Assembly: GCF_000150275.1 (NCBI RefSeq)
Contig: NW_002060944.1
Location: forward strand, 3,596,474 to 3,660,473
Length of the DNA: 64,000 nucleotides
From: Trichoplax adhaerens
Taxonomy: Eukaryota > Animalia > Placozoa
Direction of reading: 5' to 3'
Shown here: in pieces, positions 1 to 64,000 of the stretch
Numbering within the stretch: position 1 is the first letter of the stretch
Layout of the letters: every line of letters begins with the position of its first letter
Made by a program: the position numbers and the translations under genes
The notes under the pieces: model-generated
Seen by the model: the letters and a program-made list of their open reading frames with translations, nothing else
Told to the model about the DNA's origin: nothing
Databases searched by the model: none

Positions 1-1140
1 TTAGGGCTATGTAAATTCGTGTTTTATAGCTTTGTATCGGCCAAAGAATAGTTAAATTTCGTTTGTGAATTGTTATGCCTAACGAATCTAAAGGGTTATA
101 GTGTCATAATGAAATATTTGGATATGTACTTTTGATTTAAATTATTGCGCAGCTCAAATATTACAGCGACGCGTTTAGTTGAACATTCATGCTTATACGT
201 TTGCTGACTTGAAATAAATCTATTTAGAGAATTTTATTAAACTAAGAAATTGATCTAACCTGCTCTTTAAATAATTCTTTGCTACAATTTCTTAGAGCAC
301 TTGTTCTAAAGTAGTAATTTTCATCTAGAAAAAGAAAAATTGCAGTCAATTAATACGTGTATCATTTGATTTGAATTCTTCTAAAGTAGTTATACGAATA
401 AAACTGTAATATTTTAATTACTTTACGTTTAGGATTATTTTAGTTTGAAGACGATGGTGGATAAAATCTATTAGACATCGCCCAACGTTCGATAGTTTTA
501 AGCTCCCTCTCTTCTTAATGATTGCAGTGATATACAGAAATGAGGCGCATATGTTAATAATTTAGTTTAAATAACTGAGAAGCGAATGTAGTAGTTATAC
601 ATTATTCTATAAACAGCGTGTGGTAGGCACTTTTGTCTGTTATACTTCCTGTTCTGAATAATATAATTATTGGCGGTATTAGAAGTTAATAGGTAGGCTA
701 CAATTGCTTATGGCCGATCAGTTTTAGATAAATGACTGATGTTTCCAATATGAGATTTTATCAAAGTAAGAAATTTTTTGAACTAACATTAAGAATTCTT
801 TAGTGTGGTTGTGAGTTTCTATTGGAATTCAGGCACCTCAAACTGTACACTAATAGTAATTATCGGTATACTCTAGTTATTAAGCTCTTCAGTAGTGATA
901 GCTATAGACGCCCGTATTTCTTTGTCTCATACAAATAAAACAGTATAATTATAAAGGGACTCAGTTACGAGTGCTTTCAGCTAATATACAAATACCGTGA
1001 AACATCATGGCAGTCTACAGCAATTATAAAATTTGGTGCAATTATCGAATCTTATTAGTTCTATGTACTCAGTTGCATACGATTATACTATAGGAATAAG
1101 TATACTTAGTGTACTGTTTTTCGACATATCTCCTTTCTAT

Positions 1141-16905: not shown

Positions 16906-19900
16906 TTAATGCTTTATTAAGCTTCTTAAATTAAGGCCATAATGTTTCGTCTGGAGTTGAAGTATTGTCTCGTTGCTATTAAATATTTAACCTACTCACA
17001 AGCTACGTTGATATTTTATTCTAATTGATTATTTCAACTATTTCCTGTTGTGTCTACGGGTGTATTTTTTAATTGAGCTTAAATTTTACTTGATTTTAAA
17101 AATTGATTACAGTTAGTTATGATAAGTACAGGATAATATCGATTTTTTCAGGTGTATTGGCTTTACGTATTTAACTGTCATATAGTAAAAGTAATGGGAT
17201 ATTTGGATGTTATTATCGAAAGAATAGGGCCAGGCCATAAAGCTTTAAGCATGATCCTGTCGTAAATAAGAAAGCATGCTAGTTTAATAATAGATGGGGA
17301 AGTACTAATTTCCCGTTAATACCAATCTGTTATTGTGGTATTATTATTCTTAAAGCTATGTTCGACATCACTTATACATAATTCCTTCTTCTCTATTCTG
17401 CTTACATTTTGACCATCCAAGTTATTCGTAACTAAATTTGTCGCAGCATTGATAAATCTCTTTACAATATTCTGTCTTAATTTCTTAATTTAAATACGAT
17501 ACAATTATGAATACTAGTTTCCATAATGATACTGCATTCAACGCAAAAATAAATTTAACTTTATTTTATACTGGGAATTGATTCAATGAAATACTGTAGT
17601 ATAAGCTAATTTATCAATACATGGTTGCTATGGGAATTAGCATCTTTATCTAGTAAATGAATAGAAGAAGAAATCATCGATGGTGGATATAGAAGGAATT
17701 ATATTAGTTGCGGTAGTGTCTATGAGTTCTATCCACATTCTTGATAATACAGTATGAACCGAGTAGAATGTCTATTTTAATATTCATTTCTTACTACTTA
17801 GTACTGCCGTTACTTAGCACTTTATTGGACATTAAGAGCGATTATTTAACCGCAAGTCCCCTTTATCCAGTCTAAAAAGAGCATAATCTTCGAACGTAAT
17901 ATTGAAGATATAAATTGGAGCGTTGAAGAATGTATTCTTTTTGGAGTATAAAATTATATTAAGAGGGAAACGAACTTGATAATTGAGTTTTTTAATTGCG
18001 GTAATGCTATATGTTGGATACAATTTATTAATTAGATTATATTAGTCAATAGTGGCCTTTAAGCAACAATCACTATCTTGAACTATATCTTTCTCTACCC
18101 TAAGCCGTAGATTTATGATAAAGATTTATATCAGCAAAATATTTATGTAAATTTGCTTGTGTTAGTATTTCATAATAAGAAACGTAAGATTAATCATTCA
18201 CTTAGCATGCTATTGCTATCATATCTAAGATTTAGATCGCTATAGTTTGGATGAATTATACTTATTTGAATGGGTAAACTATCTTTAAAATATTGTGTAT
18301 TAACTCAACTACTAGATGAAAATCTTTATGTAATACATCATCGTATCGGTTACTGATCGTTATGATAGGAGTACATGGTCTTAGTGGATAAGAATGTATA
18401 AGTAATAATTATATAAATACGATTTCCAATTCTTATTTCTATTACGTTATCACTGTATAAAACTTAGTCATGGCATGATCACGTAATCTTATTAAAATCA
18501 TACAGTAACTGGTATAGAGTCTCGTCATGGCTATGACAAACACCTTGTGCATATTTAATAAGTCGTTGTTTACGGCGGTGAATTCAGCTACTGTTGAAAC
18601 TTTAACTAGTCTGTATTGCGTCATAATAAGATACATACAAAAATTATTAAATTGAAGATTTCTTATTTTGTTTACCTTATCCAATTTACAATACCTCCAT
18701 CGTCGTTATTACTGACAATAATGGCGGTATTGGATAAAGTAACCAAGTAGAGAAATATCTTATTAATATTTGGTTAATAATGTATTAGATCAACTTGTTT
18801 TTGTTATTGATATTTCTTCGTTCTATAATTATTTTCATGATGATGACGATAGTAACTCCAGTCGATATTCAAAGTCAGTCTGTACCAAGCCCAAAATCAT
18901 AAATAATCATTACTTATTGAATATTCTGTCTATTGCGTATTGGATGTCTATGTCGGATGTTGCTGACAATCAATTTGACCCTGTCTTCTATTACGATCAC
19001 GTTTTATCATAATATTGTGCTGTTATTGCCTATATTATTATTTATTATTGCAGAAAATAGTTCAGTTGATTACTAATTACTTTATGATCTTTACGGATTA
19101 AGGTTAATTTTATAATGACATTGTATTGCCAAGGCATTGCGTTCCTCAAATTATTATTTTATCTCTTTAATCATACTGTTTTCTCATTATGGTACTATCA
19201 ACACTTGATCAATAACCATAGATATTCTTCGAATGACATCATAGTAGTCAATTTTTTAAATTGTTGATGTTTGTTGTTGTTGTCATTATTACTATGATGA
19301 TTACGTATCTGCTATTACTATTCATGCTAAAAGTAGAAAGAACTGTATGATAATTTATCCACAGCCAATTGATTGGATAGAAAAAATAGAGAGACAACAA
19401 CTTTCTCCTTATCATATTATTAGCAATCTAATGTTAATTTTTATGCTCACTGCAACTGTATTAGCAACAATCTGCATTGTCGTGGTGCCTCAATTCTAAC
19501 TATTTATCTGATATTCTACTATCAACAAAAAACAACTTACATCTAAGGCAAGAGTAAATCATGAAAGTTGTTTTCGTTGAGTTAGATTACTTTTATTTTT
19601 TGAACTGAACAATTAAACCACTTTTTTATCCTTTGCGTCATTCGCTTTTATGCCTTAACCTATTTTATTTTTTTCACCCCAGTGATAATAAAGTATATGA
19701 CGTAAATTACCACTTCAGAACAACGATCCAACGTCTACTTGCGTATTAAAATCAATCAACTAATATAGATGATTTTGCTATTGATGCAATAGCGATATAG
19801 TTTATCAATATCAACCCTAGAGCTTACTTTATCAATACGATATTATGTTTCCAATTATATTCGAAAGCTAAACAATCTATTTACGCTACACTCTTGACCG

Positions 19901-22729: not shown

Positions 22730-23030
22730 NNNNNNNNNNNNNNNNNNNNNNNNNNNNNNNNNNNNNNNNNNNNNNNNNNNNNNNNNNNNNNNNNNNNNNN
22801 NNNNNNNNNNNNNNNNNNNNNNNNNNNNNNNNNNNNNNNNNNNNNNNNNNNNNNNNNNNNNNNNNNNNNNNNNNNNNNNNNNNNNNNNNNNNNNNNNNNN
22901 NNNNNNNNNNNNNNNNNNNNNNNNNNNNNNNNNNNNNNNNNNNNNNNNNNNNNNNNNNNNNNNNNNNNNNNNNNNNNNNNNNNNNNNNNNNNNNNNNNNN
23001 NNNNNNNNNNNNNNNNNNNNNNNNNNNNNN
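22730..23030. other. Assembly gap (301 N)
   Basis: Run of N; ORFs spanning it are artefacts. Confidence 1.
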
Positions 23031-48501: not shown

Positions 48502-51500
48502 ATGTCTCGTGAAGTTAGTTTCGAATTATCTTTATCAGCTTATGACGATGATAAAAGTAGCCGGCGAGGATCATTTCGTCGCTCAACACCTTCTGATCAA
48601 GGCGATATTAGGCTGGATAAATTAACTCAACTGGATCCAGTACTTCGTGATCTCTATGACGATGATTATAGCACCAATTCAGGCAATGACCGACGGCGTG
48701 TCCATCGCTATCATACGAAAAGATATGCTAATGGTTCTGCTGTTATATCGACTGATCATATGCGCTCATTCGATCGTGAATTAGCCGAATTAGGTGCTGG
48801 TGTTCGACCAGCCCAATCAGCTCGTCGTAAAAGCCAATATCAACGTATCAGCAATAATAATTTGGATGTGGTTAATGATCGAAATCGTTCTACATCATTC
48901 TTAACGCCAGATCCATTCGCTAGTGGTAATATGATCGATCTTAATCAACGTGTTGTTGATTTAGATCAGACCAGTAGTCTAACATCAGCTGGGTTACAAC
49001 AGCCATCCAACAATTCTGGACCTAGTCCACCCCAATCGAAAGATCCTAATTCTAAAACAATATTTGCTAAAAAAGCTAAAATTGTTAAAATTGTTCGTCA
49101 CGGTCCATCGCCACAAGAATTTATCAATTTACTACTCAATCATCGTACAAGCAACAACTTTCATCGGATACTTTATGAACTTAATTCCAATTTTGAATTA
49201 CGCCATGATCGTCAAACATTTTTTCGCCCTATCGATAAATTGTTTACACCAAATGGGAAAAAGGTAAATAAAATACACGTATCCTGCCAATTCAATTACA
49301 CCCACTTTTATATCATTGACAGCGAGTTCCATACTAATAATGACCATAATTTGATTTTTAAAAATTAAAAAGCGACGATTTACATGTCGCGTAGAGCTCA
49401 TTCTTAGGGTAGTCATTGATATAATTACAAATTGATTAATTTTTAGCAATCCACTTCCAATCAGTAACTTAATTTTAAGTATCAACCAATTTCCAATTTG
49501 ATAGAATAGCGATTACTCATCAACTGATGAAGGTTACAGTCAATTTGTTAAATCTATTTTGGAAATGCAATTGGTTTACAACATAGTTTTGCTAGAAGTT
49601 AAATTTTAAGATATAATAGTGTAGATTTGATGCTTAAAATTTTTCCAATATTCTATCGTAAATTAAAATTATTGACGCCTTGCTTCTATACAATATATAA
49701 TATTAACGTATGCGTATGCCCCATATTGTAGAACGATTTAGTGTTTAGAAGGTACATTTATGATAACGAAAAATAACAATCAGAAGTTCATACTGTACAG
49801 TATTCCATATATTCTTTAAAAAATAGAAAACAACGTTCAAATAGTATCAATAGTATATTTTATTAAGTGTATATGTATTCAAGGTGAACAAGTAAATAGA
49901 TCATAATCAGTATAGCAAGTATTAATAACTTTTCCATTTTTTATATTTAAAGAATCATTTATGACTATTATCCTTTTCTAATTTTTACTATAAAAATTTG
50001 CCTTAATCGTTACAATTACTTTCTAATTTGTTTTGAATAAAATCACGTAGACAATCGTTAGAACTATCGCCGATACTTTTTAAAGCTCATCGCCGTTTCA
50101 TATTGGAATACTTAATCAGCATAAACGAAAAGTATTCCTAGACGGTATACTAATGAGCTACTAGTAAGCATTCAATTGTATAAGTAATATGGCGATAAGA
50201 TGAGTATGATTTTGGCCAGCGCTAATTTACTTAAATTAGTACTGGACGTAGTTTCAAATCTCGGGTAGGAAGTTACCTGTCTTCATATTTATCATACAAA
50301 GATCATCTAATGCGTATCCAACAAAGTGATGTAATGGAAATTTAACAGTGTTTGATCATCAACGGATGAAACTCTAAGTCATTTCCTGCAAATTTTTCCA
50401 TTTAATTAATATTTGATAATTATTAGCTTTTTCTTACCGTAGCATGTCTACCTATTTATACAGTAATATAATCACATAGAAACTAGACTGCTAAATTTAT
50501 ATCATTTCTGTCAATCCAGTATTATTGATAATGTCAATTATCGCATTTATAGATTACGTCTGTTATCAATCTATTCAACGAGGGAAATATTTTTATTGCT
50601 GTGGGTGAAGAACCATTCAATCCTACCAACTTCACTATTCAATTTTATAACGGTTCAGGTAATAATTAATTAAACTGGTCATTTCTGTCTGTCTTTCATA
50701 TTATCCTTGCTTACAAGTGAATTACAAATTAAATTTAATTATTTAAATCAGTTAAAAAAATGAAAATCATTTTTTTAGTCTTACCTACAACACCTTACAA
50801 CAGAACATCTCAAGAAATGTCACGAAAAGGTTATAGAACATCGGATGATATTGCTCGAGGTTTGTATTCTATCTAACATGCTAGCAATCTGAAAGGTTAA
50901 TGCTGTTTACGAAATAAAATAACACTCTAACGCGAAAATGTCTCATTATTACGGCAATTATAGCCAAAACAGCGCCGTTGTCTCGAAAACATAATAAGGT
51001 AAGAATAACAAAGATAACTTACGTAATTTAAATGTCCATATAGTCATTACATAGCATCTACATACTCTAGTAATACTGGTGTGGCAATAACTTATTTTAT
51101 TTTATGCCAAGAAAATTAATAAAAATTATCTGCATGGAATACCAAGAAATACTTCAGTAGCTTGCTCTTATAACAACACAACATGTTGCAAATTTATCCT
51201 TCACCTTAACTTCCGATCGATCACAATTTGCATCGAAATATTTGGACTTCGTTGATGTCAAATGTACTTGATCTTTTAACATCTAATTGAGATAGTTCAA
51301 TAGGAGTACTTTTTTTATTAACCTCTTTGCCTAACAACTCAACCCTTTCTGATATGTATCAAAATGGTTAGGCTTGATGCTGTAATGTGTATAGAATGGA
51401 TAATTTATCATTACACAAAAGCGTAGGCTCTTCTAACAAGAACATGAATTCGTTATATTACCTGGAAAATTTAATTTTTATAATAATTATTCTATATTAC

Positions 51501-54500
51501 TCTTATAGTATGACGATAAACGTGATAAGGGAACTCGATCATTACTTGAGCGTGAGCAATTATCGCCATACGCAATTCCACTAGAGCGACCATGGACAGT
51601 CAATAGCCACAGCTTATATTCTAACTCGGGACTAAGAACCGAGCTATCAACAGACACAAGGTTTGATATTAGTAAGGAAAGCGACAAACTACAACATCTT
51701 GCTAATTTAATCGGTCCTGAAATACCACCACCATCGCTAAGTTATAACGGTCAATTAACTAAAGAGCAAGACTGGAATCAGTTATTAGCGCAAGTACAGC
51801 AAAGCCAATCTAACGATCAAGATGCATACAAGACTGTTAATTTCTCATCCAATAATTCAAGATGGAGGCCAAATTCAGCACGTAGTGATAAGAGTCTCTC
51901 ATCCTTGTCAAGTTTAGAAGACCGTCCTATCCAACCTGTTCCACCTTCATCAATGAATCGTCCAAAGTCAGCTAATTTACGTCATCGCCGAACTCTGCAT
52001 ACTACATCAGGAAATGAACAAGTTCAGAAAGAAGGCGTACCGATGACCAAAAGCGTCGATAATAGTATTGTATCTGATGATGTTAGCGATGATCGAGCAT
52101 CAAGACTACTTGATAATAGTTCTAATCACTCCTTTATTCCATCGCCACCAAAAACAGATAAATCGAAGCGATCCAAGTATAGTCGGCGAAGACTCAAAGG
52201 CAGAGGAAAGCAGTTATCAAGTTGTTATTCCGATTCTAGTATGGATGAAGCATCTAGACGATCATCAGCAGCAAGAGATGAATATTACAGTAGTCATAAC
52301 GAAACTCTACGTAATCATCGTAGCGTTAAAAATGAAGTTGCTAATCAACATAAGCCAATCACTACAGATACTGCCGTGCAGTGTGATAGTGATTTAGCAG
52401 AAGAAAAGAACCCTCCACCGTCATCAGATATTCAGAATAACGAAAGCAATATAATGCCGCAAAGTGTTTCTAACATCATTGATAACTTTGCTAATAGACA
52501 AGCAAATCTAGTTATTATGAGAGCAATTATTGATGTAATGAAAACCAATAATGATTACGATCAGGCAGAAAGCAAGAATAATCCGTTACCTACAAATACT
52601 AGTACTGACTTACCCACAGTAAGGTCTAAATTATCACCTTTAATTTATGAATTTGCAAATAGGCAAGCTAATTCAATAATGATGAAAGCTTTCATTGATG
52701 TCCTTGAAATTAAGAAATCAGCAATAATAGAACATTATCATCACGTTGTAAATAATGCCATTACTCAATCTAGTATCAATAATAATGACTTAAAGTCAAC
52801 AGAACTAACTGTATTTAGTAATTCAGATAATGTTAATAGCAATTCAGGTGAGACTCACAGGAATAAGGATATAAATCAAAATGTACTTAACGGTGCCGAA
52901 GCATCATACGATGAAAATGAAATAGCAATCAGTGAAGCTTCCGTTGCCTCCACCCAACAAGATATGAATATTATCAATATGCAGATAGATCGAGAATTGA
53001 ACAAATATCAGTTAAGTCATGCCGATACAACTACAGCGATAAGTGAAAACGAAAATGTGATAACTTTATCACACGACCAAGGCATTAATAATGGCCCATC
53101 AAACATAGAGCTTACTAATTCGGCGGAGTTACCCCAAAATGACGATCAGTTAAGTCAGCCAAATGCCAGTAAAGTGTTAGATGAAGACGAAGAGATTACC
53201 TTAGACTACCAAAAGCTCGATCAAAATGAAGATGACTATCCATCAACTGTAGAACTTGTTAATGAAGTAGAATTGACAAAAACTGAACATGGCATCGAGT
53301 CATCTCAAGAGCCAATCATCCCAGGAGTTGAGGTTATTCTAGAATCACAAAACCATCCAGTCGTTGCTGTTGCTAGTGAATCATTAATGGATCTTCTTCC
53401 ATTACAAAAATCAGCAAATATGAGTGATAGCGATATCGACGCTCAAGATAATAAGGAAATATTCGCAAATACAATGGACCAGAATGCTAAAAATGGTTCT
53501 GAATTGGGAAACAGCATTACTACGGAACAAAATGTGAACGATTCCCAATTGATCGAAAGCTATAAAGCAGCTCTTGCAGGAACAAAATATGAAACTGATG
53601 AAGCAGAGAGCCAAATAGCAGGTACTACTTTAATCGCTGGCGATTCCACAAATTTAATTACAGCACGAAGTCAAGATAGCGTTGAAGACATTCTTGAACC
53701 TTCTATGGAATCCTTTTCAGTTGGCAGTAGATCAGACAGTGAAAACTCATATGAAGATGAAATTGAAGAGCAAAGTCCTGAAGTCGACAATACTAATGGA
53801 CATAACCAAGAAGATAGTATGATTAAGGCGTTCGATGCAGATATTATTGATCAAGAAATGGATCAAAACCCCATCAAGATAGCTCAAGAAAATTTGGCTA
53901 GTGATCAAGAGATACATGACAAAATTTCTATATCATCAAGTCATCAGAGTCCCGATCAACAAAGTAGTAGAGAAGAAATTATAGAAGCCTTATCAGTTAT
54001 TCCACCGGAACAAATGGTTGTATCGCAGGTTCTAGAAGATGGACTCAAAGCAAATAATACATCAGTAAAATCCGGTAACTCACAAGAGGATATAATATTT
54101 AATAATGATACTATTAGTATAGAAACAACACCAAATTTGCCAAATGATCAAGAAGTAGATGAGAGGATTTCTACATCGAGTAATCAAGCTGCTGATCAGC
54201 AAAGTGCTCAAGAGGAAACTTTAGAAGTCATATCAGCTGTCCCACCAAAACAGATTATTGCATCGCAAGCTCAAGAAAATGAAAGCGATGCAAATAACGT
54301 ATCCGTAAAATCTTATAACTTACAGCAAGAGGCAATCTCCAATATCGATGTTAATAATATAGAAACAACACCAAATTTGCCTGGTGAGCAAGAAATTGAT
54401 GAGAAAGTTCCAACAAGTTATGGGGCTGTTGGTCAGCAAAGTATTCAAGAAGAAATTTTAGATGATATTTCATCTGTTGTATCGCAGGTTGTAGATGATG

Positions 54501-57500
54501 AAACTGATGCAAATAATACATTAGTAAAATCTGATAACTTACAACAGGATGTAATTTCTAACAATGAAGCCACTAGTATAGAAATAGCAACAAATTTGCC
54601 TAGTGATGAAATTGATGAGAAAATTTCTGCATCAAGCCATCAGTCTGTCGATCAGCAAAGCATTAATGAAGAAATTATAGATGATGTAACTGCGGTTACA
54701 TCAGAGAGATGATAGCATCACAAGTAATGGAAGACAAGGCTGATGCGAATACCGCAACATTTAAACCTGATAGCTTACAACCGGATACAATCTCGGATAA
54801 AGAAGATAATAATGCTACTGATAAAAAGGAAGCAGTAGAAAATAAGAAAAGTTATAATGATAATGATAGAAGGGTAGAACAAGCTACTGACAACAAATCA
54901 TCAGAACCCGATGATGTAGTGGCAACGAACCAAATAAAGTCCCAAACAAACAGCAATTCGCCACCAGATGATACTCGATCGAACTCAGAACGTAGCAAGC
55001 CTACTAATAAAGAAGGAAAAAAATCAGAAAAGTATAAGAAGAAAGATCAGAAACATGATCCAAATAAGAAACAAAATTCGAAGGAAAACATCGTAGCAGT
55101 TGTCCCTGCCACAGAAACTGGCAATGAAGACCTCAAGCCTGTAAATAACAATCAAAATGAAGAAGACTTACAAGTACATTATGTCAGCACTCCTAAAACG
55201 GACACTAAAATTAGTGATGCATCTAATAGTTCTGCTAAGGGAAGTCATCTCCACAATCAATTAATCGATCAAGAATCGGAGAATGCTGTAACCGAAAATA
55301 GATCTTCTGATGTAGTGGATCATAATTCTGTGTTACCGAGTGCTAGTATAAATCATAAAAAGGAGGAAGAGTCAGCAAACGTTGCTTCATCATCTCCCGG
55401 TAAAGAAATAGAGCATCATATTGATGATGATCAATCTCATCTAATCGAAACCATCCAAAAAGATAACTCCAATATAGAACTTTCCGAACCAAACGCTGAG
55501 GATATCCAAAACATTCAAGAGGATACTGTAGTATCGCCACCAAATGAAAATGTCGTAAAAGCAACTGCTGAAGCTTCAGAATTAGCTGAAAAAGCAGAAA
55601 TCGATGCTAGATATAACCAGAGATCATCATTAACGCTTTCTGAAAATGTCAATTCTCAAATATCAGATGAGAAAAGCAGCTATAACAAACTTGAAGAAGA
55701 TCAAGAGCAATTACTGCAGTTACATGACAACGAATTAGTCAACGCTGTAGATAGAGATCAAACTGAAAGCATTGCTAACGCTAGCTTCTCCAGCCAGTCA
55801 AATGTTACTGAACCTTCTCCGAAAGTCGATGAGATCTTAGAAGACCATCAAAGCCAAACAAACGATCATCAAGCCAAGGTAGAAGATAATACAGCAATTA
55901 ATAATTTACTTCAGTCATCTCATCAGGTTTCAGAAGATCAACTTCAATTGCAAGGAAAAAGTGACCAAACAGAAAATAATCATGATGTGAATGTAGCTGA
56001 AATAGGGCAGAAAATAGAAAATCAATCCACAGATGATCAACAAGATCAAACTATGGCAGTAGATCTATCACAGAGAACGGAAGAGCATTCCTCTGTCGTT
56101 AGCCAAAGTAACGATCATCCTAACGATACAAAGAGTGTCCAAGATCAAGATAATGAGCAACAAAGCACAGAAAGTGCAAGCCATGATGGTCCTATCCAGG
56201 ATAAAGCATCAGATAGAATGAGTGTTAGAGATAATATAAATATCCCTACCGATTCAATATTACCCAAAGCTCATGTAGGAATGATTACTAATAAGAATAC
56301 CACTGAAAATAGTTCATCTGAGGATAAGAAAGAAATATTCAAAAATCATCCGGCCGATCAAGAATCTACAGCGAAGGGAGAAATTGAGAACAAATTTTCA
56401 GATAACAAAAATAATTTGGCTTCCCAAGACAGCCATCAGAACAATATTACCGATGATCATTCGAATAGACTTGTAGCAGAAAACGAAATTATAGCTAAGG
56501 CAAACGAGAGCATCGATGATAGCACCATTGATTCGACAGATGATAAACTGATTTCAACTCAACATAGAAGGGATGAAATTGAAGAAAGTAACAGTACCAT
56601 CGAGAACCGATCGGAATTGAATACAGAAGTTCCTGACCAAGATCGAATTAAAAACAATTTGAAGAATGAAAGTGAGGACAAGATCGATCACTATCAAAAT
56701 AGCGAATCTCTAAAAGATGACATCAAGTCAACTAATGACAATAACAACCAGGAAGTAAATGATCAAGAAGAAAAACTAAATAGTGATCACTCATTGCCTG
56801 GGGACGAGGAAATAGGTCGATATCACCAGCCTATAGTTGCAGAAAATAAGAACATAGAAAAAGACTCAGTATTGAGCAAAGATGAAGATGATAATCTTAA
56901 TAGTAAGCCATCAACAATGGAGAAGGAGGAAATACAAGCAAAAAATAACGAAATAAATCAAGATCAAACGGCAGGTCAAGCGAATGATGAGCAAGTAGAA
57001 TCGATCATAGCAAAGGATAGTAATGTTAATGAAATCATGGTCGACGAGACCACTGTCGATAGTAACGAAGCCGAAATTAATGCTGCAGAAAATACCCATT
57101 TCAATACACCAAGAGATAGAATAGATCAATACGAAAGTAGAGACAGGGATCAAACTACTATCGATGATAACGAAACCAAAATGGATACTAGAGACAGTAG
57201 CCACTTCAATTCGCAAGAGCATAAAATAAATGAAAATGGAGCCATCACTAGAGAGAGCGAAGCCAATCCAATTATTAATAATGAAGCCATTGAAGAGGGT
57301 AAACAAGGAGAAATTAGTACCGGAGAAGAGAGCCACCCAAACTTGCAAAACGAGAATACTAGCCAGGACGCAACCATGATTACAAATCAAAAGGCTGCAA
57401 GTCCAATTTCAGCTGAAAAACATATCCAAGAAGCCACTGATCAAGATATTGATCAATCTAAAGATGGTGATTCAACTCTGTTAAGGGAAGATGACAAGAA

Positions 57501-60500
57501 GGATGCCAATGGTTATCAATCCAATGATAACCAGGTAACTCTTAGTCAAGGCAAGGAAACTGAACAAGTTCTTCATAATCAGTATTATGATAGCGGAACT
57601 GTAGAAAAAGATGAAGATGGAAACGTAACGACAACCGACAAAAATTTAACGAGCCAAGATAATAATATAAGTCTAAATGATGGGACTCTAACCAGAGGAG
57701 ATATTCCAACACAAAATACTGAAAAAGATGATCAAAATAACGAACCATCGAAAGAGTTGCAGGTAGAAACAGATAAAAGTTCCGTTCTTCAAGATGTCGA
57801 GAATAACAATAATCATCAAACAACACAAAATCTCCTTGAAGAAAGGAATAACTTAAATACCAATCAGCAATCTGAGAACGAAGAGAAATTTCAGGAAATT
57901 AGCAAAGTTAGACATGATCAAATAACGGAAGATGAATCCATAAATGATCGAGGTGATCGAGAGCCAGAAGGGAGAAGTAATGACCATTTTAACATCAATA
58001 AAGATCAAAATGATGAAACTAATCAAGGACTTAACGACAGCCAACATGGAGATCAAGAACAAGAAAAAATGAAGAGCGATAAACTTGACGTCCATGAAGA
58101 AAATGGAATCGCAAAGCACCAATCTTCTGGTCACGAAGTGGATAGAGAAACCAATGGAAAGGTGCAAGATCAACATGTAAATGATCAAGATGATGGAATC
58201 AAGCCACAAGTGAATGACGACCAACATTTAGAACAAGAGCGTAAAGAAGGAAATCATGATCACGCTACTAGTGATAAGAAAAAGAGTGAACAAGGAGAGC
58301 TTTCGGATCATCATCTAGAAGGCAAACCTGCAGACGATCATAGTAAGCAAGAAATGAATAATAGCCAGAATACTCAAGAAGAAATCGAGAAGACAGATCA
58401 TAGTAGCAATAATAAGGCAGCAATTGAACAAGAGCAAATTTCCGATGAATTGAGAAATAAAATCAACGGAAAGGCAGAAGGCGAATCTGTAAATAATCAA
58501 GACAGTAAAGGACCAGAAAGTCAATCTATCAATAATCAGAAAGCAGTAGAAGAAAGGCAACTATCTGATCATGAATCAGAAAGTGAAGTGGATCGAAAGG
58601 TAGACGATAGGTCTACAGAGGATTATGATAAAGTTGAAAAAGAAAATGACAATAACCAACGTTTAAATCAACAACAAGAGAAAATCAATCATGATCATCA
58701 CATTGCTGATAATGAGACAACAAAGGAACAAGAGCAACTTGTAGGCCATGAATTGCAAAGTCAAGTCGATCGAACGATAGAAAATGAACCTGTAAATAAT
58801 CAAAATAATGACCAAGTTGGACAAGAGATCGATGGCAGCCAACGTTTACAACAAGGAGAAACAGACGGTCATGATCATACAGCTAGTACTGACAAAGCTT
58901 TCGAGCAAGAACATCCTTTAGCTCATGAATCGGACGGCGAAGTTGATGTAAAGATGAAAGAATCTGTCAATGATCAGGGCAATAACGAAGTCAAGCAAAA
59001 AATTGATGATAGTCAATATTCGGATAGAGAACCAGAAGAAATAAATTATAACAATCATAACATCAATAATGAACAAGAACAGACTTCAGGTCATGAATCG
59101 GAAGCCAAAACCGATCGAAAAATGGAAGAATCTGTAAAGCATCAACATAACGATGAAGCGAACCAGGAAACTGATGATAGCCAGTCCTTAGACCAAGAAC
59201 AAGAGCAAATTAATAGCAAGGCAACTGAAGAGCAATCGTTAAGCCATGAACCAGAAAGCAACGGAGATTCAACGATGGTAGATGAAGCCGCAAAAGATCA
59301 GCATGACGAAGTTAAGCCCGATGGCAGCCACCTTTTAGATCAAGGGCAAGAAGAAATGAACCATAACGATCATAATATCGATAGAGAGGAAGCAATGGAA
59401 GAAAAACAACTTTCAGTTCATGAATCTGACGATAAATTGGATGGAAAGATACAAGATGTGCCTGCAAATGATCAAGATAATAATGAAGTTAAGCAAGAAA
59501 TCGATCCAAGTCAACATTATGATCAAGAGCCAGAAGAAGTGGATCACAAGAACCACAACGTCGATGATGAGAAAGCAATCGAAGAGGTGCAAAATTCAGA
59601 CTATGCATCGAAGGACGACTTCGGTCGAAAAGCCGATGATGAACCTGCCAGAGACCAAGATCACGACGAAGTTAAACAAGAAACCGATGATAGCCAACAT
59701 TTATCTCAAAAGCAGGAAGTTAGTCATGACGATCATGAATCCAAAAATGAGAAAGAGATGGAGCAAGAGCAAAATTTAGGTCATGAAGCTGAAGAAGAAT
59801 CAAAGGTAGAAAATATGCCCGTAAACGATCAAGGTAATGCCCAAGTTAAAGAAGAAAGTGATAGTAACCAACAACTAGATCAAGAACAAGGAATAAATAA
59901 TGACGACCATGCCATGAAAAGTGAGACAGCAGCTGAAGAAGGAGAACTTCTAAGTCATGAAGTTGAAATGGATCGAAAACCGGAAGATGAAAACGTAAAT
60001 GATCCAAATAATAGCGAAGTGAAACAAGAAACCGTTAGCAATCCACATTTAGATCAAGAGCAAGAAACAAGTAACGATAACCATAGCATGAGTGATGAGC
60101 AGGCAATCGAAGAAAGGCAACCTTCAATTCATGAATCTGAAGGCAAAATCGATCAGAAGGTGGAAGATGAACCTGTAAATGATCATGATAATGCCAAACA
60201 AGGAGAAATAAATCATGATAATCATAACATCGACCATGATAAAGCAATGGAAGAAAACCAAGTTATAGGTCAAGGATCCAATGACGAAGTGGATCGAGAG
60301 ACACAAGATGAATCCATAAACGATCAAAATAATGATAATGTCAAACAAGAAACCGATGACAGCCAGCATTTAGAGAAAGAGCAAGAAGAAATAAATAACG
60401 GCGACACTAATGTCGACAGAGAGAAAGCAGTCGAGAAAGAGCAACTTTCAGGTCATGAATCTAAAGGCGAAGTCGATCGAAATGCAGAAAATGAATCTCA

Positions 60501-63500
60501 TAATGATCAAAACGTCGATGACGAGAAAGGAGCTGAGAAGGAGCCACTTTCAGGTCATGAAACTGAAAGCGAAGTCGATCGAAATGAATCTCATAATGAT
60601 CATAACGTTGAAGATGAGAAAGTAATTAAGGGAGGAGAACTGGCGAGTTATGAATCTGTAGGCGAAGTCAATGGAAAAGCAGATGATGGATCTCATGATG
60701 ATCATAACCTCGATGGTGAGAAAATGATTGAGAAAGGAGAACTGGCAAGTCATGAATCTGTAGGCGAAGTCAAAGGAAAAGCAGAAGATGAATCTCATGA
60801 TGATCAAAATATCAATGATGAGAAAGAAGTTGAGAAAGAGCAACTATCAGGTCATGAATCTGCAGGTGAAGTCGATCGAAAGGCAGAAGATGAATCTCAT
60901 AATGATCAAAACGCCAGTTATGAGAAAGGGCAATCTGAAGGAGAAATAGATCAAAAGACGGAAAACGAATTAAATCAAGAGCAAGAAGAAATGAATAATG
61001 ACGGTCATAACATCGAAGATGAGAGAACGCTCAAAGAAGAGCAGCTTTCAGTTCATAAATCTGAAGGTGAGCTTGATCGGGAAAAAGCAGTTGAGGAAGG
61101 GCAACTTTTAGATCATGAATCTAAAAGCGAGATCGATGGAGAGAAAGCAGCTGAGGAAGGGCAAGTTCTAAGTCATGAATCTGAAGGTGAGATCGCTAGA
61201 GAGAAAGCAATTGAAGAAGGGCAAGTTTCAAGTCACGAAGCTGAAGGTGAGGTCGATCAAGAGAATGCAGTTGAGGAAGGGCAAGAAGAATTAGCTAACG
61301 CCGATCATAATGTTGATGGCGAGAAAATAGCCCAAGGTCATGAATCTGATCATGAAATTGAGCGAAAGGCCAAATCTAAAGACGATCAAGAAAATGCTGA
61401 CTTTAAAGCAGAAACGCATGGCAATCAACAATTAGACGAACAGCAAGAAGAAATAAACAGTGATGGTCATAACATTGATAGTGATAAAGCAGCCGATGAA
61501 GAACAACTTGTAGGTCATGAATCTGAAGGTGAAATGGATCAAAAGATGGAAGAATCTAATCAAGACCAAGGGGAAACAAACAACGTTGATGGTAAGGATG
61601 GCCAACTTTCAGGTCATGAATCTAAAGGCCAAGCCGATCAACAGACCGACGATGAATCTCGTCAAGGTCAAGAAGAAATTAATAATGATGACGATGGTAA
61701 GGCAGCAGTCGACGAAGGGCAACCCATAGATCATGAATCTGTAGGTGAAGCTGATCAAAAGGCAGATGAATATAATCAAGAGCAAGAGGAAATAAACCAC
61801 GATGCTGAGAAAGCAATCGAGGAAAACCAACTTTCAGGTCATGAATTTGAAGTCGAAGCCGATCAAAAGACAGAAGATGAATCCCATCAACATCAAGAAG
61901 AAATAAATAATGACGATGGTAAGACAGCAGTTGAAGAAGGACAACTTGCAGATCATGAATCTGAAGGCGAAGCCAATAGAAAAACTGAAGACGAACCTAG
62001 TCAAGACCAAGAAAAAACAAATAATGATGATCACAACGTTGATAGTGAGAAAGTAACCGAGGAAGGCCAACTTTCAGGTCATGAATTTGAAGTCGAGGCT
62101 GATCAAAAGACAGAAGATGAATCCCATCAACATCAAGAAGAAATGAATAATGACGATGGTAAGACAGCAGTCGAAGAAGGACAACTTGCAGATCGTGAGT
62201 CTGAAGGCGAAGCCAACGGAAAAGCTGAAGATGAACCTAGTCAAGAGCAAGAAGAAACAAATAATGATGATCACAACGTTGATAGTAAGAAAGCAACCGA
62301 GGAAGGCCAACTTTCAGGTCATGAATCTGAAGTCGAGGCTGATCAAAAGACAGAAGATGAATCTCATCAACATGAAGAAGAAATGAATCATGATGAAGAT
62401 GGTAAGACAGTAGTTGAAGAAGGACAACTTGCAGATCATGAGTTAAAAAGCGAAGCCAACGGAAAAGCTGAAGATGAACCTAGTCAAGACCAAGAAGAAA
62501 CAAATAATGATGAGCACAACGTTGATGGTACGAAAGTAACCGAGGAAAGCCAACTTCCAGGTCATGAATCTGAAGGCGAAGCTGATCAAAAGACAGAAGA
62601 TGAATCCCATCAACATCAAGAAGAAATGAATAATGACGATGGTAAGACAGCAGTTGAAGAAGGACAACTTGCAGATCATGAATCTGAAGGCGAAGCCAAC
62701 GGAAAAGCTGAAGATGAACCTAGTCAAGAGCAAGAAGAAACAAATAATGATGATCACAACGTTGATAGTGAGAAAGTAACCGAGGAAGGCCAACTTTCAG
62801 GTCATGAATCTGAAGTCGAGGCCGATCAAAAGGCAGAAGATGAATCTCATCAACATCAAGAAGAAATGAATCATGATGAAGATGGTAAGACAGTAGTTGA
62901 AGAAGGACAACTTGCAGATCATGAATCTGAAGGCGAAGCCAATAGAAAGACTGAAGATGAACCTAGTCAAGACCAAGAAGAAACAAATAATGATCACGGC
63001 GTTGATAGTGAGAAAGTAACCGAGGAAGGCCAACTTCCAGGTCATGAATCTGAAGGCGAAGCTGATCAAAAGACAGAAGATGAATCTCATCAACATCAAG
63101 AAGAAATGAATAATGATGAAGATGGTAAGACAGTAGTTGAAGAAGGACAACTTGCAGATCATGAATCTGAAGGCGAAGCCAATAGAAAAGCTGAAACTAG
63201 TCAAGAGCAGGAGGAAGCAAATAATGATGATCACAACGTTGATAGTGAGAAAGTAACCGAGGAAGGCCAACTTCCAGGTCATGAATCTGAAGACGAAGCT
63301 GATCAAAAGACAGAAGATGAATCCCATCAACATCAAGAAGAAATGAATAATGACGATGATAAGACAGCAGTTGAAGAAGGACAACTTGCAGATCATGAGT
63401 CTGAAGACGAAGCCAACGGAAAAGCTGAAGATGAACCTAGTCAAGAGCAAGAAGAAACAAATAATGATGAGCACAACGTTGATAGTGAGAAAGTAACCGA

Positions 63501-64000
63501 GGAAGGCCAACTTTCAGGTCATGAATCTGAAGGCGAAGCTGATCAAAAGACAGAAGATGAATCTCATCAATATCAAGAAGAAATTAATCATGGTGAAGAA
63601 GGACAACTTGCAGATCATGAGTCTGAAGGTGAAGTCAATAGAAAAACTGAAGATGAACCTAGTCAAGAGCAAGAAGAAACAAATAATGACGAGCACAACG
63701 TTGATAGTGAGAAAGTAACCGAGGAAGGCCAACTTTCAGGTCATGAATCTGAAGACGAAGCTGATCAAAAGACAGAAGATGAATCTCATCAACATCAAGA
63801 AGAAATGAATAATGACGATGATAAGACAGCAGTTGAAGAAGGACAACTTGCAGATCATGAGTCTGAAGACGAAGCCAACGGAAAAGCTGAAGATGAACCT
63901 AGTCAAGAGCAAGAAAAAACAAATAATGACGAGCACAACGTTGATAGTGAGAAAGTAACCGAGGAAGGCCAACTTTCAGGTCATGAATCGAAGGCGAAGC
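48502..64000 (+). CDS. Giant doublecortin(DCX)-domain protein with AKAP-like helices and acidic His-rich repeat tail (RP1/RP1L1-like architecture); 3' incomplete, 1-nt frameshift at ~54707
   Basis: Exons 48502-49263, 50553-50658, 50779-50859, 50964-50998, 51509->64000; all GT-AG with consistent phases. DCX domain KIVKIVRHGPSPQEFINLLLNHRTSNNFHRILYEL...IDKLFTPNGKK|ITSVINLFNEGNIFIAVGEEPF resembles the second DCX domain of DCX/DCLK. The frame from 51509 ends at TGA 54710-54712; the adjacent frame is open from ATG 54709 to the window end. More than 4400 aa if continuous. Confidence 0.85.
53870..54800 (+). repeat. Coding tandem repeat, ~75-80 aa unit x4
   Basis: IETTPNLP.(D/E)QE(V/I)DE(R/K)IS.SS.Q..DQQS..EE...SQV.E....AN...VKS.NLQ; the fourth unit spans the frameshift. 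Confidence 0.85.
57900..64000 (+). repeat. Coding Glu/Asp/His/Gln-rich tandem repeat; near-perfect 240-bp (80 aa, dimer of ~40 aa) units from ~61837
   Basis: GHE(S/F)E motif starts at 61837, 62077, 62317, 62560, 62800, 63040, 63277, 63517, 63739, 63979 (spacings 240,240,243,240,240,237,240,222,240). Degenerate versions extend 5' to ~57900. Confidence 0.95.

What the first reader, a model, noticed from the sequence alone, without database searches (positions are those of the whole stretch)
48502..64000. Giant (>4400 aa) DCX-domain protein with RP1/RP1L1-like layout, mostly invisible to the ORF track
Seen: one DCX domain split over small exons, then a single exon of at least 12.5 kb in a genome whose other exons here are mostly 27-200 nt. 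The frame 54709-64000 (~3100 codons) appears stop-free and so is not listed in the track. Established: vertebrate photoreceptor-axoneme proteins RP1 and RP1L1 have N-terminal DCX domains and a huge terminal exon, with Glu-rich tandem repeats in RP1L1. Inference: together with the X-box and AKAP-like helices, a candidate undescribed ciliary/microtubule scaffold: microtubule anchor, PKA-type docking sites and a very long polyanionic disordered tail. It is either a deep RP1-family relative or convergent. This is the best candidate for a new system in the window.
Basis: partly seen in the sequence, partly recalled or inferred. Interest (0 to 1): 0.82.

Follow-up and report, generated by a model that had tools for sequence, protein, structure and literature searches.

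The report
Placozoan doublecortin gene beside giant acidic exon
A real doublecortin-type microtubule-binding gene of the placozoan Trichoplax sits just upstream of a real 18-kb open exon, found in no public protein set searched, that encodes a roughly 6,000-residue, extremely acidic repeat tail; sequence alone favours but cannot prove that the two are one protein, and it is not shown to be an RP1 relative.

Summary
The sequence facts hold. Exon 1 (48502-49263) and exon 2 (50553-50658) encode a DCX domain: 22.5 bits on exon 1 alone, and 37.9 bits on the 99.6%-identical public Trichoplax sp. H2 protein. From 51509 an open frame runs about 18.3 kb, beyond the window to a stop at 69803-05. It has two small frame breaks and a 1,649-N stretch. 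There are no in-frame stops where 76, 215 and 81 are expected.

The tail is disordered, with net charge about -1,025. It contains 80-aa tandem repeats and ends in about 27 YD-like 20-aa repeats. No public protein covered the parts searched, and the genome has no paralogue.

The DCX-to-tail join is unproven. The H2 model stops at 50874-76, and an AATAAA lies 37 nt later. However, the tail has 150 open codons before its first ATG. An in-phase path also exists through a 35-nt micro-exon that carries the best donor in the interval.

RP1 kinship is not supported: there is one intact DCX domain, closest to the second (C-terminal) domain of human DCX. The X-box is at chance level and the AKAP helices are weak leads.

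Earlier scan notes propose similar acidic giant tails on other heads in this genome (adducin, Apaf-1-like). Those are on different DNA, and no sequence elsewhere in the genome matches this tail.

The parts
48502..49263 (+). Exon 1: start codon, conserved N-terminal region, and the first two thirds of the DCX domain (about 49132-49263). Donor AAG|GTAAAT, phase 0.
   Evidence: Pfam DCX 22.5 bits, profile positions 1-43. 99.6% identical to H2 protein P0001 and 72-73% to two other placozoan ORFs. tblastn mapping.
50553..50658 (+). Exon 2: last third of the DCX domain (ITSVINLFNEGNIFIAVGEEPF...). Donor CAG|GTAATA, leaves in phase 1.
   Evidence: P0001 gives a full-length DCX match, 1-60/60, 37.9 bits.
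50779..50876 (+). Exon 3: the terminal coding exon of the public H2 model, with stop TAA at 50874-76. It also holds two phase-1 GT sites (50829|30 and 50859|60) that would skip the stop.
50913..50918 (+). AATAAA 37 nt after the exon-3 stop: a possible polyadenylation signal for a short, DCX-only product.
   Evidence: Background density is 1.2 per kb.
50964..50998 (+). Candidate 35-nt micro-exon (phase 1 in, phase 0 out) ending in donor AAG|GTAAGA. It would link exon 2 or exon 3 in frame to the giant exon.
   Evidence: The donor scores best of 106 GT sites in 49.3-51.5 kb. Sequence. Inferred, with no transcript evidence.
51509..54712 (+). Giant exon, first open frame (1,067 codons). It holds a basic Ser/Arg-rich stretch, two amphipathic helices and four 73-aa repeats. 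The first in-frame ATG comes only at about 51956.
   Evidence: Zero stops against 76 expected.
52472..52770 (+).
   Evidence: Best Pfam hit is SmAKAP at 14.7 bits, below the cut-off of 27. One helix fits the RII-binding pattern, which is not enriched over shuffles.
54685..54712 (+). Frame break 1: the two open frames overlap here, inside an (AG)n-like run within the fourth 73-aa repeat. The repeat homology continues across the break.
54709..64000 (+). Giant exon, second open frame (3,097 codons, running off the window). It grows steadily more acidic, from 21% to 38% Asp+Glu, and is 5-7% His.
   Evidence: Zero stops against 215 expected.
61806..64000 (+). Array of 240-nt (80-aa) tandem repeats, 90-95% identical. 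It continues beyond the N stretch to about 67.7 kb.

Best explanation
This is one placozoan locus that probably makes two products.

The short product is a DCX-only protein of 321 aa. It uses exon 3 as its terminal exon, with its stop and a nearby AATAAA, as annotated in Trichoplax sp. H2.

The long product would splice out of exon 2 or exon 3 before that stop. It would pass through a 35-nt micro-exon (50964-50998) into an 18.3-kb terminal exon (51509 to 69805, beyond the window). That gives a protein of about 6,300-6,400 aa.

Proposed working, by part:
- The single intact DCX domain, of the type found as the second domain in human doublecortin, plus the basic Ser/Arg stretch after it, dock the protein on microtubules.
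- The remaining 5,000 or more residues are a disordered polyanion with net charge of about -1,000. It is rich in Glu, Asp, His, Asn and Gln. It would act as a projection brush or spacer and as a high-capacity, low-affinity sink for divalent cations around the microtubule.
- The roughly 27 C-terminal YDEHGNAY..DP beta-hairpin repeats form a distal binding or self-association module.

Shown here: the DCX domain, the openness and composition of the exon, the repeats, and the in-phase splice path. Inferred: the join itself, expression, microtubule binding, and every functional role of the tail.

The two frame breaks are most simply read as draft-sequence errors or very recent indels.
For: - DCX domain.
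- Organism and orthologue: exon 1 is 99.6% identical to 'Neuronal migration protein doublecortin [Trichoplax sp. H2]'.
- The exon is coding: 0 in-frame stops in 1,067 + 3,097 + 1,240 codons against 76/215/81 expected, while the other five frames are full of stops.
- The exon starts at the best acceptor of the interval. It is open for 150 codons before its first ATG, so it needs upstream coding sequence. The DCX exons are the nearest on the same strand, 630 nt away.
- The donor at 50999 (AAG|GTAAGA) is the best of 106 GT sites in 49.3-51.5 kb. It is in phase 0 with the 51509 acceptor, and the micro-exon accepts phase 1, matching exon 2 and both internal donors of exon 3.
- No convincing ATG-initiated first exon lies between 50877 and 51508.
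- Tail properties.
- C-terminal repeats.
- The stop is followed by a change in composition and an AATAAA about 275 nt later.
Against: - The only public gene model (H2, P0001) ends at the exon-3 stop, and an AATAAA lies 37 nt after it.
- The micro-exon acceptor is mediocre (pyrimidine fraction 0.5), and the internal donors of exon 3 score only 5.0.
- No predicted protein anywhere covers the parts of the tail searched, including in the H2 annotation.
- No orthologue of the tail was found in other placozoan data, although exon 1 orthologues at 72% identity exist.
- There are two frame breaks.
- Substitutions between repeats are spread almost evenly over codon positions (27/30/30 variable columns). 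Only the open frame and the composition look constrained, not the sequence.
Confidence: 0.5

Rival explanations
1. There are two separate genes. One is a complete 321-aa DCX-domain protein, as annotated in H2. The other is an independent, unannotated gene for a giant acidic repeat protein. The second gene would have its own promoter in the roughly 0.5 kb after the DCX gene. Its start codon would be, for example, the ATG at 51364-66, cut off by an intron straight afterwards (ATG|GTTAGG to the 51509 acceptor). Under this reading the tail has no microtubule anchor, and its function (cation-binding or matrix-like polyanion) is unrelated to DCX.
For: - The H2 model ends at 50874-76, and an AATAAA lies 37 nt later.
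- An ATG in a CAAAATGG context at 51364 is followed by a GT in phase 0 with the 51509 acceptor.
- The tail ends in YD-like repeats, which in known proteins are mostly extracellular or bacterial.
Against: - The ATG|GTTAGG donor is weak (score 5.5), and an upstream ATG at 51354 would give a 6-codon dead end.
- This reading does not explain the best donor of the interval at 50999, which lies in phase with 51509 and sits downstream of an open, ATG-less frame.
- No signal peptide is available for a secreted reading: the hydrophobic stretch at 50940-50963 cannot be reached without a stop.
- The terminator-plus-promoter interval on the same strand would be very short.
Confidence: 0.33
2. The giant frame is not a working gene in this strain. 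It is an expanded coding-derived repeat tract that has just been inactivated: both frame breaks are real. Alternatively it is never expressed, so only the 321-aa DCX protein, or at most a product of about 1,400 aa ending at 54712, is made.
For: - Two frame breaks.
- No public protein model covers the parts searched.
- No detectable orthologue of the tail.
- Near-neutral substitution pattern between repeats.
Against: - There are 3,097 and 1,240 stop-free codons downstream of the breaks, where 215 and 81 stops are expected. Any inactivation would have to be extremely recent.
- Break 2 lies 430 nt from an N stretch in a repeat array, where draft errors are common.
- The strand and frame bias and the clean change of composition at the stop fit a live coding exon.
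Confidence: 0.1
3. It is a true deep orthologue of the vertebrate RP1/RP1L1 family, that is, a photoreceptor- or cilium-axoneme protein, rather than a convergent layout.
For: The layout is the same: a DCX head in small exons and a huge terminal exon with acidic repeats (PMC11967996). The alignment to full-length human DCX is colinear through a possible vestige of a first DCX domain.
Against: - Only one DCX stretch passes Pfam. The vestige alone finds no DCX structure.
- The RP1/RP1L1 clade is vertebrate-only in PMC1550402.
- No ciliary X-box is present above chance.
- The tail resembles nothing known.
Confidence: 0.05

Closest known systems
Doublecortin / DCLK group of the DCX superfamily (Pfam PF03607), and single-domain members carrying only the C-terminal type such as DCLK3 or DCDC1 (Reiner et al. 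2006, PMC1550402)
   Same: The intact domain passes the DCX model. It aligns over its full length with the C-terminal DCX domain of human doublecortin (41.6 bits, E 1e-9). The public H2 orthologue is named doublecortin by its annotators.
   Different: - The first DCX domain is at most a vestige.
- There is no kinase domain.
- The genome holds a separate canonical tandem-DCX gene elsewhere (L006, 100 bits to human DCX), so this one is a divergent paralogue.
- It may carry a tail of about 6,000 aa that no DCX-family member found in these searches carries.
RP1 / RP1L1 (vertebrate photoreceptor axoneme proteins)
   Same: A DCX head encoded by small exons, followed by one very large terminal exon encoding low-complexity sequence. 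RP1L1 has a C-terminal repeat region (PMC11967996).
   Different: - RP1 and RP1L1 have two intact DCX domains and a signature RP1 domain. Here there is one domain, and the signature domain could not be tested.
- The tail here is about 2.5 times longer than the whole 2,400-aa RP1L1.
- The repeats are unrelated (80-aa and 20-aa units).
- The clade is known only from vertebrates.
AHNAK-type loci: a small head domain in short exons plus a single giant repeat exon, with a short head-only isoform (from my own knowledge, not checked here)
   Same: The gene architecture is alike. So is the proposed choice between a short head-only product and a giant product that skips the early stop.
   Different: The head is a PDZ domain rather than DCX, and the repeats are unrelated. 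The isoform switch here is inferred, not shown.
YD / RHS repeats (teneurins, bacterial Rhs and Tc toxin shells)
   Same: The C-terminal repeats have a 20-residue period with a Y-D-x-x-G-N/R core. This core stays in register with a bacterial RHS protein (P0004). The predicted structure shows a beta-hairpin periodicity.
   Different: - The Pfam RHS_repeat model does not hit.
- The repeats are far more polar and acidic.
- Structure confidence is low (pLDDT 50), and Foldseek finds nothing at E <= 0.001.
- The context would be intracellular if the DCX join is real.

Membership tests
DCX-domain superfamily (PF03607) | The sequence passes the DCX profile at or above the gathering score. | tested here: met
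   Exon 1 alone scores 22.5 bits against a cut-off of 22, covering profile positions 1-43. The public 99.6%-identical spliced H2 protein P0001 scores 37.9 bits over positions 1-60/60. phmmer to the C-terminal DCX domain of human doublecortin gives E 1e-9.
DCX-domain superfamily (PF03607) | Ubiquitin-like fold of the domain. | tested here: inconclusive
   AlphaFold2 on a 3-sequence alignment failed, with mean pLDDT 33. No fold search was made on that model.
DCX-domain superfamily (PF03607) | Binds tubulin or microtubules. | not testable with these tools
   Needs co-sedimentation or imaging.
RP1 / RP1L1 | Two intact tandem DCX domains at the N-terminus. | tested here: not met
   Only one DCX stretch is found in Pfam. 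Residues 55-140 on their own retrieve no DCX structure at E <= 10.
RP1 / RP1L1 | Signature RP1 domain after the DCX domains (PMC11967996). | not testable with these tools
   No profile of that domain is in the libraries.
RP1 / RP1L1 | The DCX domain falls in the RP1/RP1L1 clade. | not tested
   No labelled RP1 sequences were at hand. [quoted passage not shown]
RP1 / RP1L1 | Very large terminal exon with a low-complexity or repeat region. | tested here: met
   An 18.3-kb open exon with 80-aa and 20-aa tandem repeats. This is a likeness of layout only.
A-kinase anchoring proteins (amphipathic helix that binds the PKA regulatory subunit) | A helix fitting the RII-binding pattern, above chance, or a match to an AKAP profile. 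| tested here: inconclusive
   Helix 1 fits the pattern and helix 2 misses by one residue. There are 2 hits in 1,067 aa against 1.08 expected from shuffles. SmAKAP is the top Pfam hit, but at 14.7 bits against a cut-off of 27. No AKAP peptide was found in the PDB search. The pattern was taken from memory.
RFX / X-box regulated ciliary genes | X-box near the promoter. | tested here: not met
   The nearest loose match lies at 46551-64, about 1.95 kb upstream. There are 12 such matches in the window against 18 expected. The only near-palindromic site is at 17624.
YD / RHS repeat proteins | Match to the RHS/YD repeat profile, and a beta-hairpin spiral fold. | tested here: inconclusive
   - No PF05593 hit.
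- SBBP scores 40.5 bits summed, but no single stretch passes.
- Weak hit to RHS protein P0004: E 4.6e-4 against the database, 22% identity.
- AF2 shows periodic hairpins at pLDDT about 50-60.
- Foldseek finds nothing at E <= 0.001.

The most novel reading that the evidence does not exclude
Trichoplax makes, from one locus, both a short doublecortin-like protein and what would be, as far as I know, the largest DCX-family protein: about 6,300 aa with net charge of about -1,000. This protein would plant a giant polyanionic, His-rich brush on microtubules, ending in a YD-like beta-hairpin array. It would be one case of a wider placozoan habit of adding giant acidic repeat tails to cytoskeletal or signalling heads by splicing out an early stop. 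Earlier scan notes propose the same for adducin and an Apaf-1-like gene in this genome.
Probability: 0.35. Interest if true: 0.6.

Novelty: new variant of a known kind. Interest (0 to 1): 0.45.

Why it matters
If head and tail are one protein, this is a new architecture in the doublecortin superfamily: a microtubule anchor carrying a megadalton-scale polyanion. It would also be an independent invention of the RP1L1-like layout in one of the simplest animals. That would be useful for asking what such tails do on microtubules, for example spacing, cation buffering or phase behaviour.

Whatever the join turns out to be, about 18 kb of clearly coding sequence turned up in none of the public protein sets searched here, for the parts searched. 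That is a concrete annotation gap, and one that public Trichoplax RNA-seq could close quickly.

Together with the earlier notes on this genome, it hints at a recurrent, testable pattern of short and giant isoform pairs in placozoans.

Tried and rejected
- Apicortin (p25alpha + DCX, known from Trichoplax; PMC8293464). Rejected: no p25alpha hit in exon 1 or P0001.
- Secreted or matrix protein reading of the tail. No reachable signal peptide: the hydrophobic stretch upstream of the micro-exon is cut off by a stop and has no acceptor.
- A first DCX domain upstream or in the N-terminus. A whole-genome scan finds only one DCX hit at this locus. The vestige is not significant on its own.
- Paralogues of the tail elsewhere in the genome, including the acidic tails noted by earlier readers. 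Only self matches were found.
- Homologues of the tail. Pfam found nothing. The word search of 54709-57708 found nothing among proteins of 1,703-5,420 aa. The exhaustive search of 51509-54709 gave zero hits at E <= 0.001. The C-terminal part gave only a marginal RHS hit.
- Structure. AF2 of the DCX protein failed. AF2 of the YD-like repeats had low confidence, and Foldseek returned only weak beta-helix matches.
- Direct splice from exon 2 or exon 3 to 51509. Out of phase, and it gives a TGA.
- Typing RP1 or DCX sequences from a paper supplement or from memory was also left out.
- The contig is not human. It is placozoan.
Full report
**Where we are.** The window is G000:C1413:3596474-3660473 of a 105.6-Mb, 1,414-contig, 30% G+C animal genome. 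The peptide of exon 1 is 99.6% identical to 'Neuronal migration protein doublecortin [Trichoplax sp. H2]' (P0001, 321 aa). The genome is therefore placozoan, most likely Trichoplax adhaerens. It is not human, so no restriction on human contigs applied.

**The observation.**
- Translating 54400-64000 shows one frame with no stop from 54685 to the window's end, 3,097 codons counted from 54709.
- Upstream, a different frame is open from 51509 to a TGA at 54710-12, 1,067 codons.
- The two frames overlap at 54685-54712, inside the fourth copy of a 73-aa repeat. The repeat homology carries straight across (..EEIIDDVTAV.. then ..EMIASQVMEDKADAN..). They are therefore one coding tract with a small indel at an AGAGAGA run.
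- I fetched the next 20 kb. There are 1,649 N (window-scale 64001-65649). The same 80-aa repeats then resume. A second break, a +2-nt difference from intact repeat copies, lies at about 66.09 kb, 430 nt after the N stretch. A 1,241-codon open frame then runs to TAG at 69803-05.
- After that stop the purine bias ends, and an AATAAA follows about 275 nt later.
- In-frame stops are 0, 0 and 0 in the three open stretches. Mononucleotide shuffles give 76, 215 and 81. The other two + frames hold 69-585 stops and the minus frames 13-229.
- This is coding sequence: 18,294 nt, or about 6,100 codons if the length of the N stretch is taken at face value.

**The DCX head.**
- Pfam DCX hits exon 1 alone at 22.5 bits (cut-off 22), covering profile positions 1-43.
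- The remainder of the domain lies in exon 2 (50553-50658).
The natural public protein P0001, which is the H2 annotators' spliced model, gives DCX 1-60/60 at 37.9 bits, E 1.9e-9.
- Against solved structures, the domain matches the C-terminal DCX domain of human doublecortin at 41.6 bits. It matches the N-terminal domain of DCLK at only 14.5 bits.
- The alignment to full-length human DCX is colinear from residue 65 to 278. It passes through a conserved motif (STDHMRSFDRELAEL against SSDRFRSFDALLADL). That N-terminal piece alone retrieves no DCX structure, so a vestigial first domain is only a possibility.
- The N-terminal 254 residues are about 70% identical in two other placozoan ORFs, so the head is under constraint.
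- A whole-genome scan finds eight DCX matches and only one at this locus.
- A canonical tandem-DCX gene lies elsewhere (L006, 100 bits to human DCX). The gene here is thus a divergent paralogue.
- It is not apicortin: no p25alpha domain is detected (PMC8293464).

**Are head and tail one gene?** This is the crux, and sequence alone does not settle it.

Against a join:
- P0001 ends in exon 3 (50779-50876) at TAA 50874-76.
- An AATAAA lies 37 nt after that stop, against a background of 1.2 per kb.
- No predicted protein covers the tail regions searched. The exhaustive search of 51509-54709 returned nothing at all. The word search of 54709-57708 returned nothing among proteins of 1,703-5,420 aa.

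For a join:
- The giant exon begins at the best acceptor of the interval (CTATATTACTCTTATAG|T). It is open for 150 codons before its first in-frame ATG at about 51956. At about 7% stops per codon, that is very unlikely for non-coding sequence, so coding sequence must enter from upstream.
- Exon 2 and both internal GT sites of exon 3 (50829|30, 50859|60) leave in phase 1, while the 51509 acceptor is phase 0. A direct join fails because it gives a TGA.
- A 35-nt micro-exon (50964-50998) accepts phase 1 and leaves in phase 0. It ends at AAG|GTAAGA, the best-scoring donor of all 106 GT sites between 49.3 and 51.5 kb.
- The frame upstream of that donor is open but contains no ATG, so it cannot be a first coding exon.
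- The only ATG-initiated alternative is ATG 51364 followed at once by GTTAGG. It is weak and is preceded by another ATG that dead-ends.

My reading is a composite terminal exon. Using the exon-3 stop and AATAAA gives the short 321-aa protein. Splicing before the stop gives the giant one. I put this at about 0.5, two separate genes at about 0.33, and a silent or just-broken tract at about 0.1.

**The tail.**
- No Pfam family matches any part inside the window, and the genome holds no paralogue.
- The first 300 residues are basic and Ser/Arg-rich (15% Lys+Arg).
- Two duplicated amphipathic helices follow at 52472-52770, then four 73-aa repeats at 53.9-54.8 kb.
- After that, acidity rises from 21% to 38% Asp+Glu, with 5-7% His and no Cys or Trp.
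- From about 58 kb the sequence is built of related modules (..EEGQLSGHESEGEADQK.EDES..). These sharpen into 240-nt tandem repeats, 90-95% identical, from 61.8 kb to about 67.7 kb.
- Every segment falls on the disordered side of the charge-hydropathy line. The net charge of the 5,403 sequenced residues is -1,025.
- Differences between repeat copies are spread almost evenly over codon positions (27/30/30 variable columns; synonymous share 0.24 against 0.18 expected). Selection appears to keep the frame and the composition rather than the exact sequence, as is usual for disordered repeats.
- The last 550 residues are about 27 copies of a 20-aa unit, YDEHGNAY.VDP.Q..QQIT.
  - They give a summed SBBP beta-propeller-repeat score of 40.5 bits, with no single stretch passing.
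  - They hit a bacterial RHS protein marginally, with the YD..G core kept in register.
  - AlphaFold2 predicts regular beta-hairpins at low confidence, pLDDT about 50-60 and pTM 0.45.
  - Foldseek finds only weak beta-helix matches.

- X-box: the loose consensus occurs 12 times in the window against 18 expected. The nearest site to the gene is 1.95 kb upstream with a mismatch. The only near-palindromic site is at 17624. This is not support.
- AKAP-like helices: the top Pfam hit of that segment is indeed SmAKAP's helix region, but at 14.7 bits against a cut-off of 27. One of the two helices fits the RII-binding pattern, which I recalled from memory, and the pattern is not enriched over shuffles. 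No AKAP peptide was found in the PDB. This is a lead, not a finding.

**How it most likely works.** This part is inference. The DCX domain and the adjoining basic stretch bind the microtubule lattice. DCX domains do this between protofilaments (PMC1550402), and single-domain family members still promote assembly. The giant polyanion cannot itself bind the acidic microtubule surface, so it should project outwards. It would then act as an entropic spacer, in the way described for the projection domains of MAP2 and tau or the side-arms of neurofilaments (my own knowledge). With its Glu/Asp/His content it could also act as a large low-affinity store for Ca2+ or Zn2+. The distal YD-like array could bind a partner or self-associate.

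**Comparison with known families.**
- It is a member of the DCX superfamily, carrying only the C-terminal type of domain.
- It works like, and is laid out like, RP1L1: DCX head, huge terminal exon and C-terminal repeats (PMC11967996).
- It fails the one RP1 feature I could test, two intact DCX domains. The RP1 clade is vertebrate-only in the published tree (PMC1550402). Convergence is therefore the better reading.
- The head-plus-giant-exon locus with a short head-only form also recalls AHNAK (from memory).

**Earlier scan notes.** Other readers of this genome noted the YD-like repeats just beyond my window (s1-801350). I show that they lie in the same open frame as the tail. Others proposed giant acidic tails on adducin (s1-746116) and on an Apaf-1-like gene (s1-747281), each likewise needing an early stop to be spliced out. 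These notes are unverified and concern different DNA. A search of the genome with 500 aa of this tail found only this locus.

**Limits.**
- All three word searches and the one exhaustive search are spent.
- No RP1 sequences were available from an allowed source, so the DCX-domain tree was not built.

**Verdict.** The sequence features are real, and the tail is a genuine annotation gap. The single-protein reading is favoured but unproven. RP1 kinship, the X-box and PKA docking are not supported. Interest is moderate, at 0.45.

Noticed in passing
L004:4000-5805 (window scale about 68.0-69.8 kb, beyond the window): About 27 tandem 20-aa YDEHGNAY.VDP.Q..QQIT repeats end the same open frame as the acidic tail. 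They keep the YD..G register of bacterial RHS repeats and are predicted as regular beta-hairpins at low confidence.
   Followed up: partly
G000:C1408:1665367-1666734 (L006, minus strand, ORF 963..52): A canonical tandem-DCX exon (Pfam DCX 83.9 bits with two stretches; 100 bits to human doublecortin). This is probably the true DCX/DCLK orthologue of this genome. I did not check whether a kinase domain follows.
   Followed up: partly
window 64001 onward (L004:1-1649) and window 22730-23030: Runs of N: 1,649 bases in the middle of the 240-nt repeat array, and 301 bases at 22.7 kb. The first makes the repeat number, and so the protein length, uncertain. I could not tell an assembly gap from withheld sequence.
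   Followed up: no
window 17624-17637: The only near-palindromic X-box-like site in the window (GTTGCTATGGGAAT, 3 mismatches to the perfect palindrome). It lies 31 kb from the DCX gene, and one such match is expected by chance.
   Followed up: no
window 50938-50994: A short ATG-initiated frame (MSHYYGNYSQNSAVVSKT, then two stops) ends just before the strong donor at 50999. If a transcript started upstream of it, this would act as an upstream ORF.
   Followed up: no
window 51509-52400: Directly after the acceptor, the giant exon is basic and Ser/Arg-rich (KSKRSKYSRRRLKGRGK and similar). It is unlike the rest of the tail. It resembles the Ser/Pro-rich region that follows the DCX domains in doublecortin (my own recollection), and could add to microtubule binding.
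   Followed up: no
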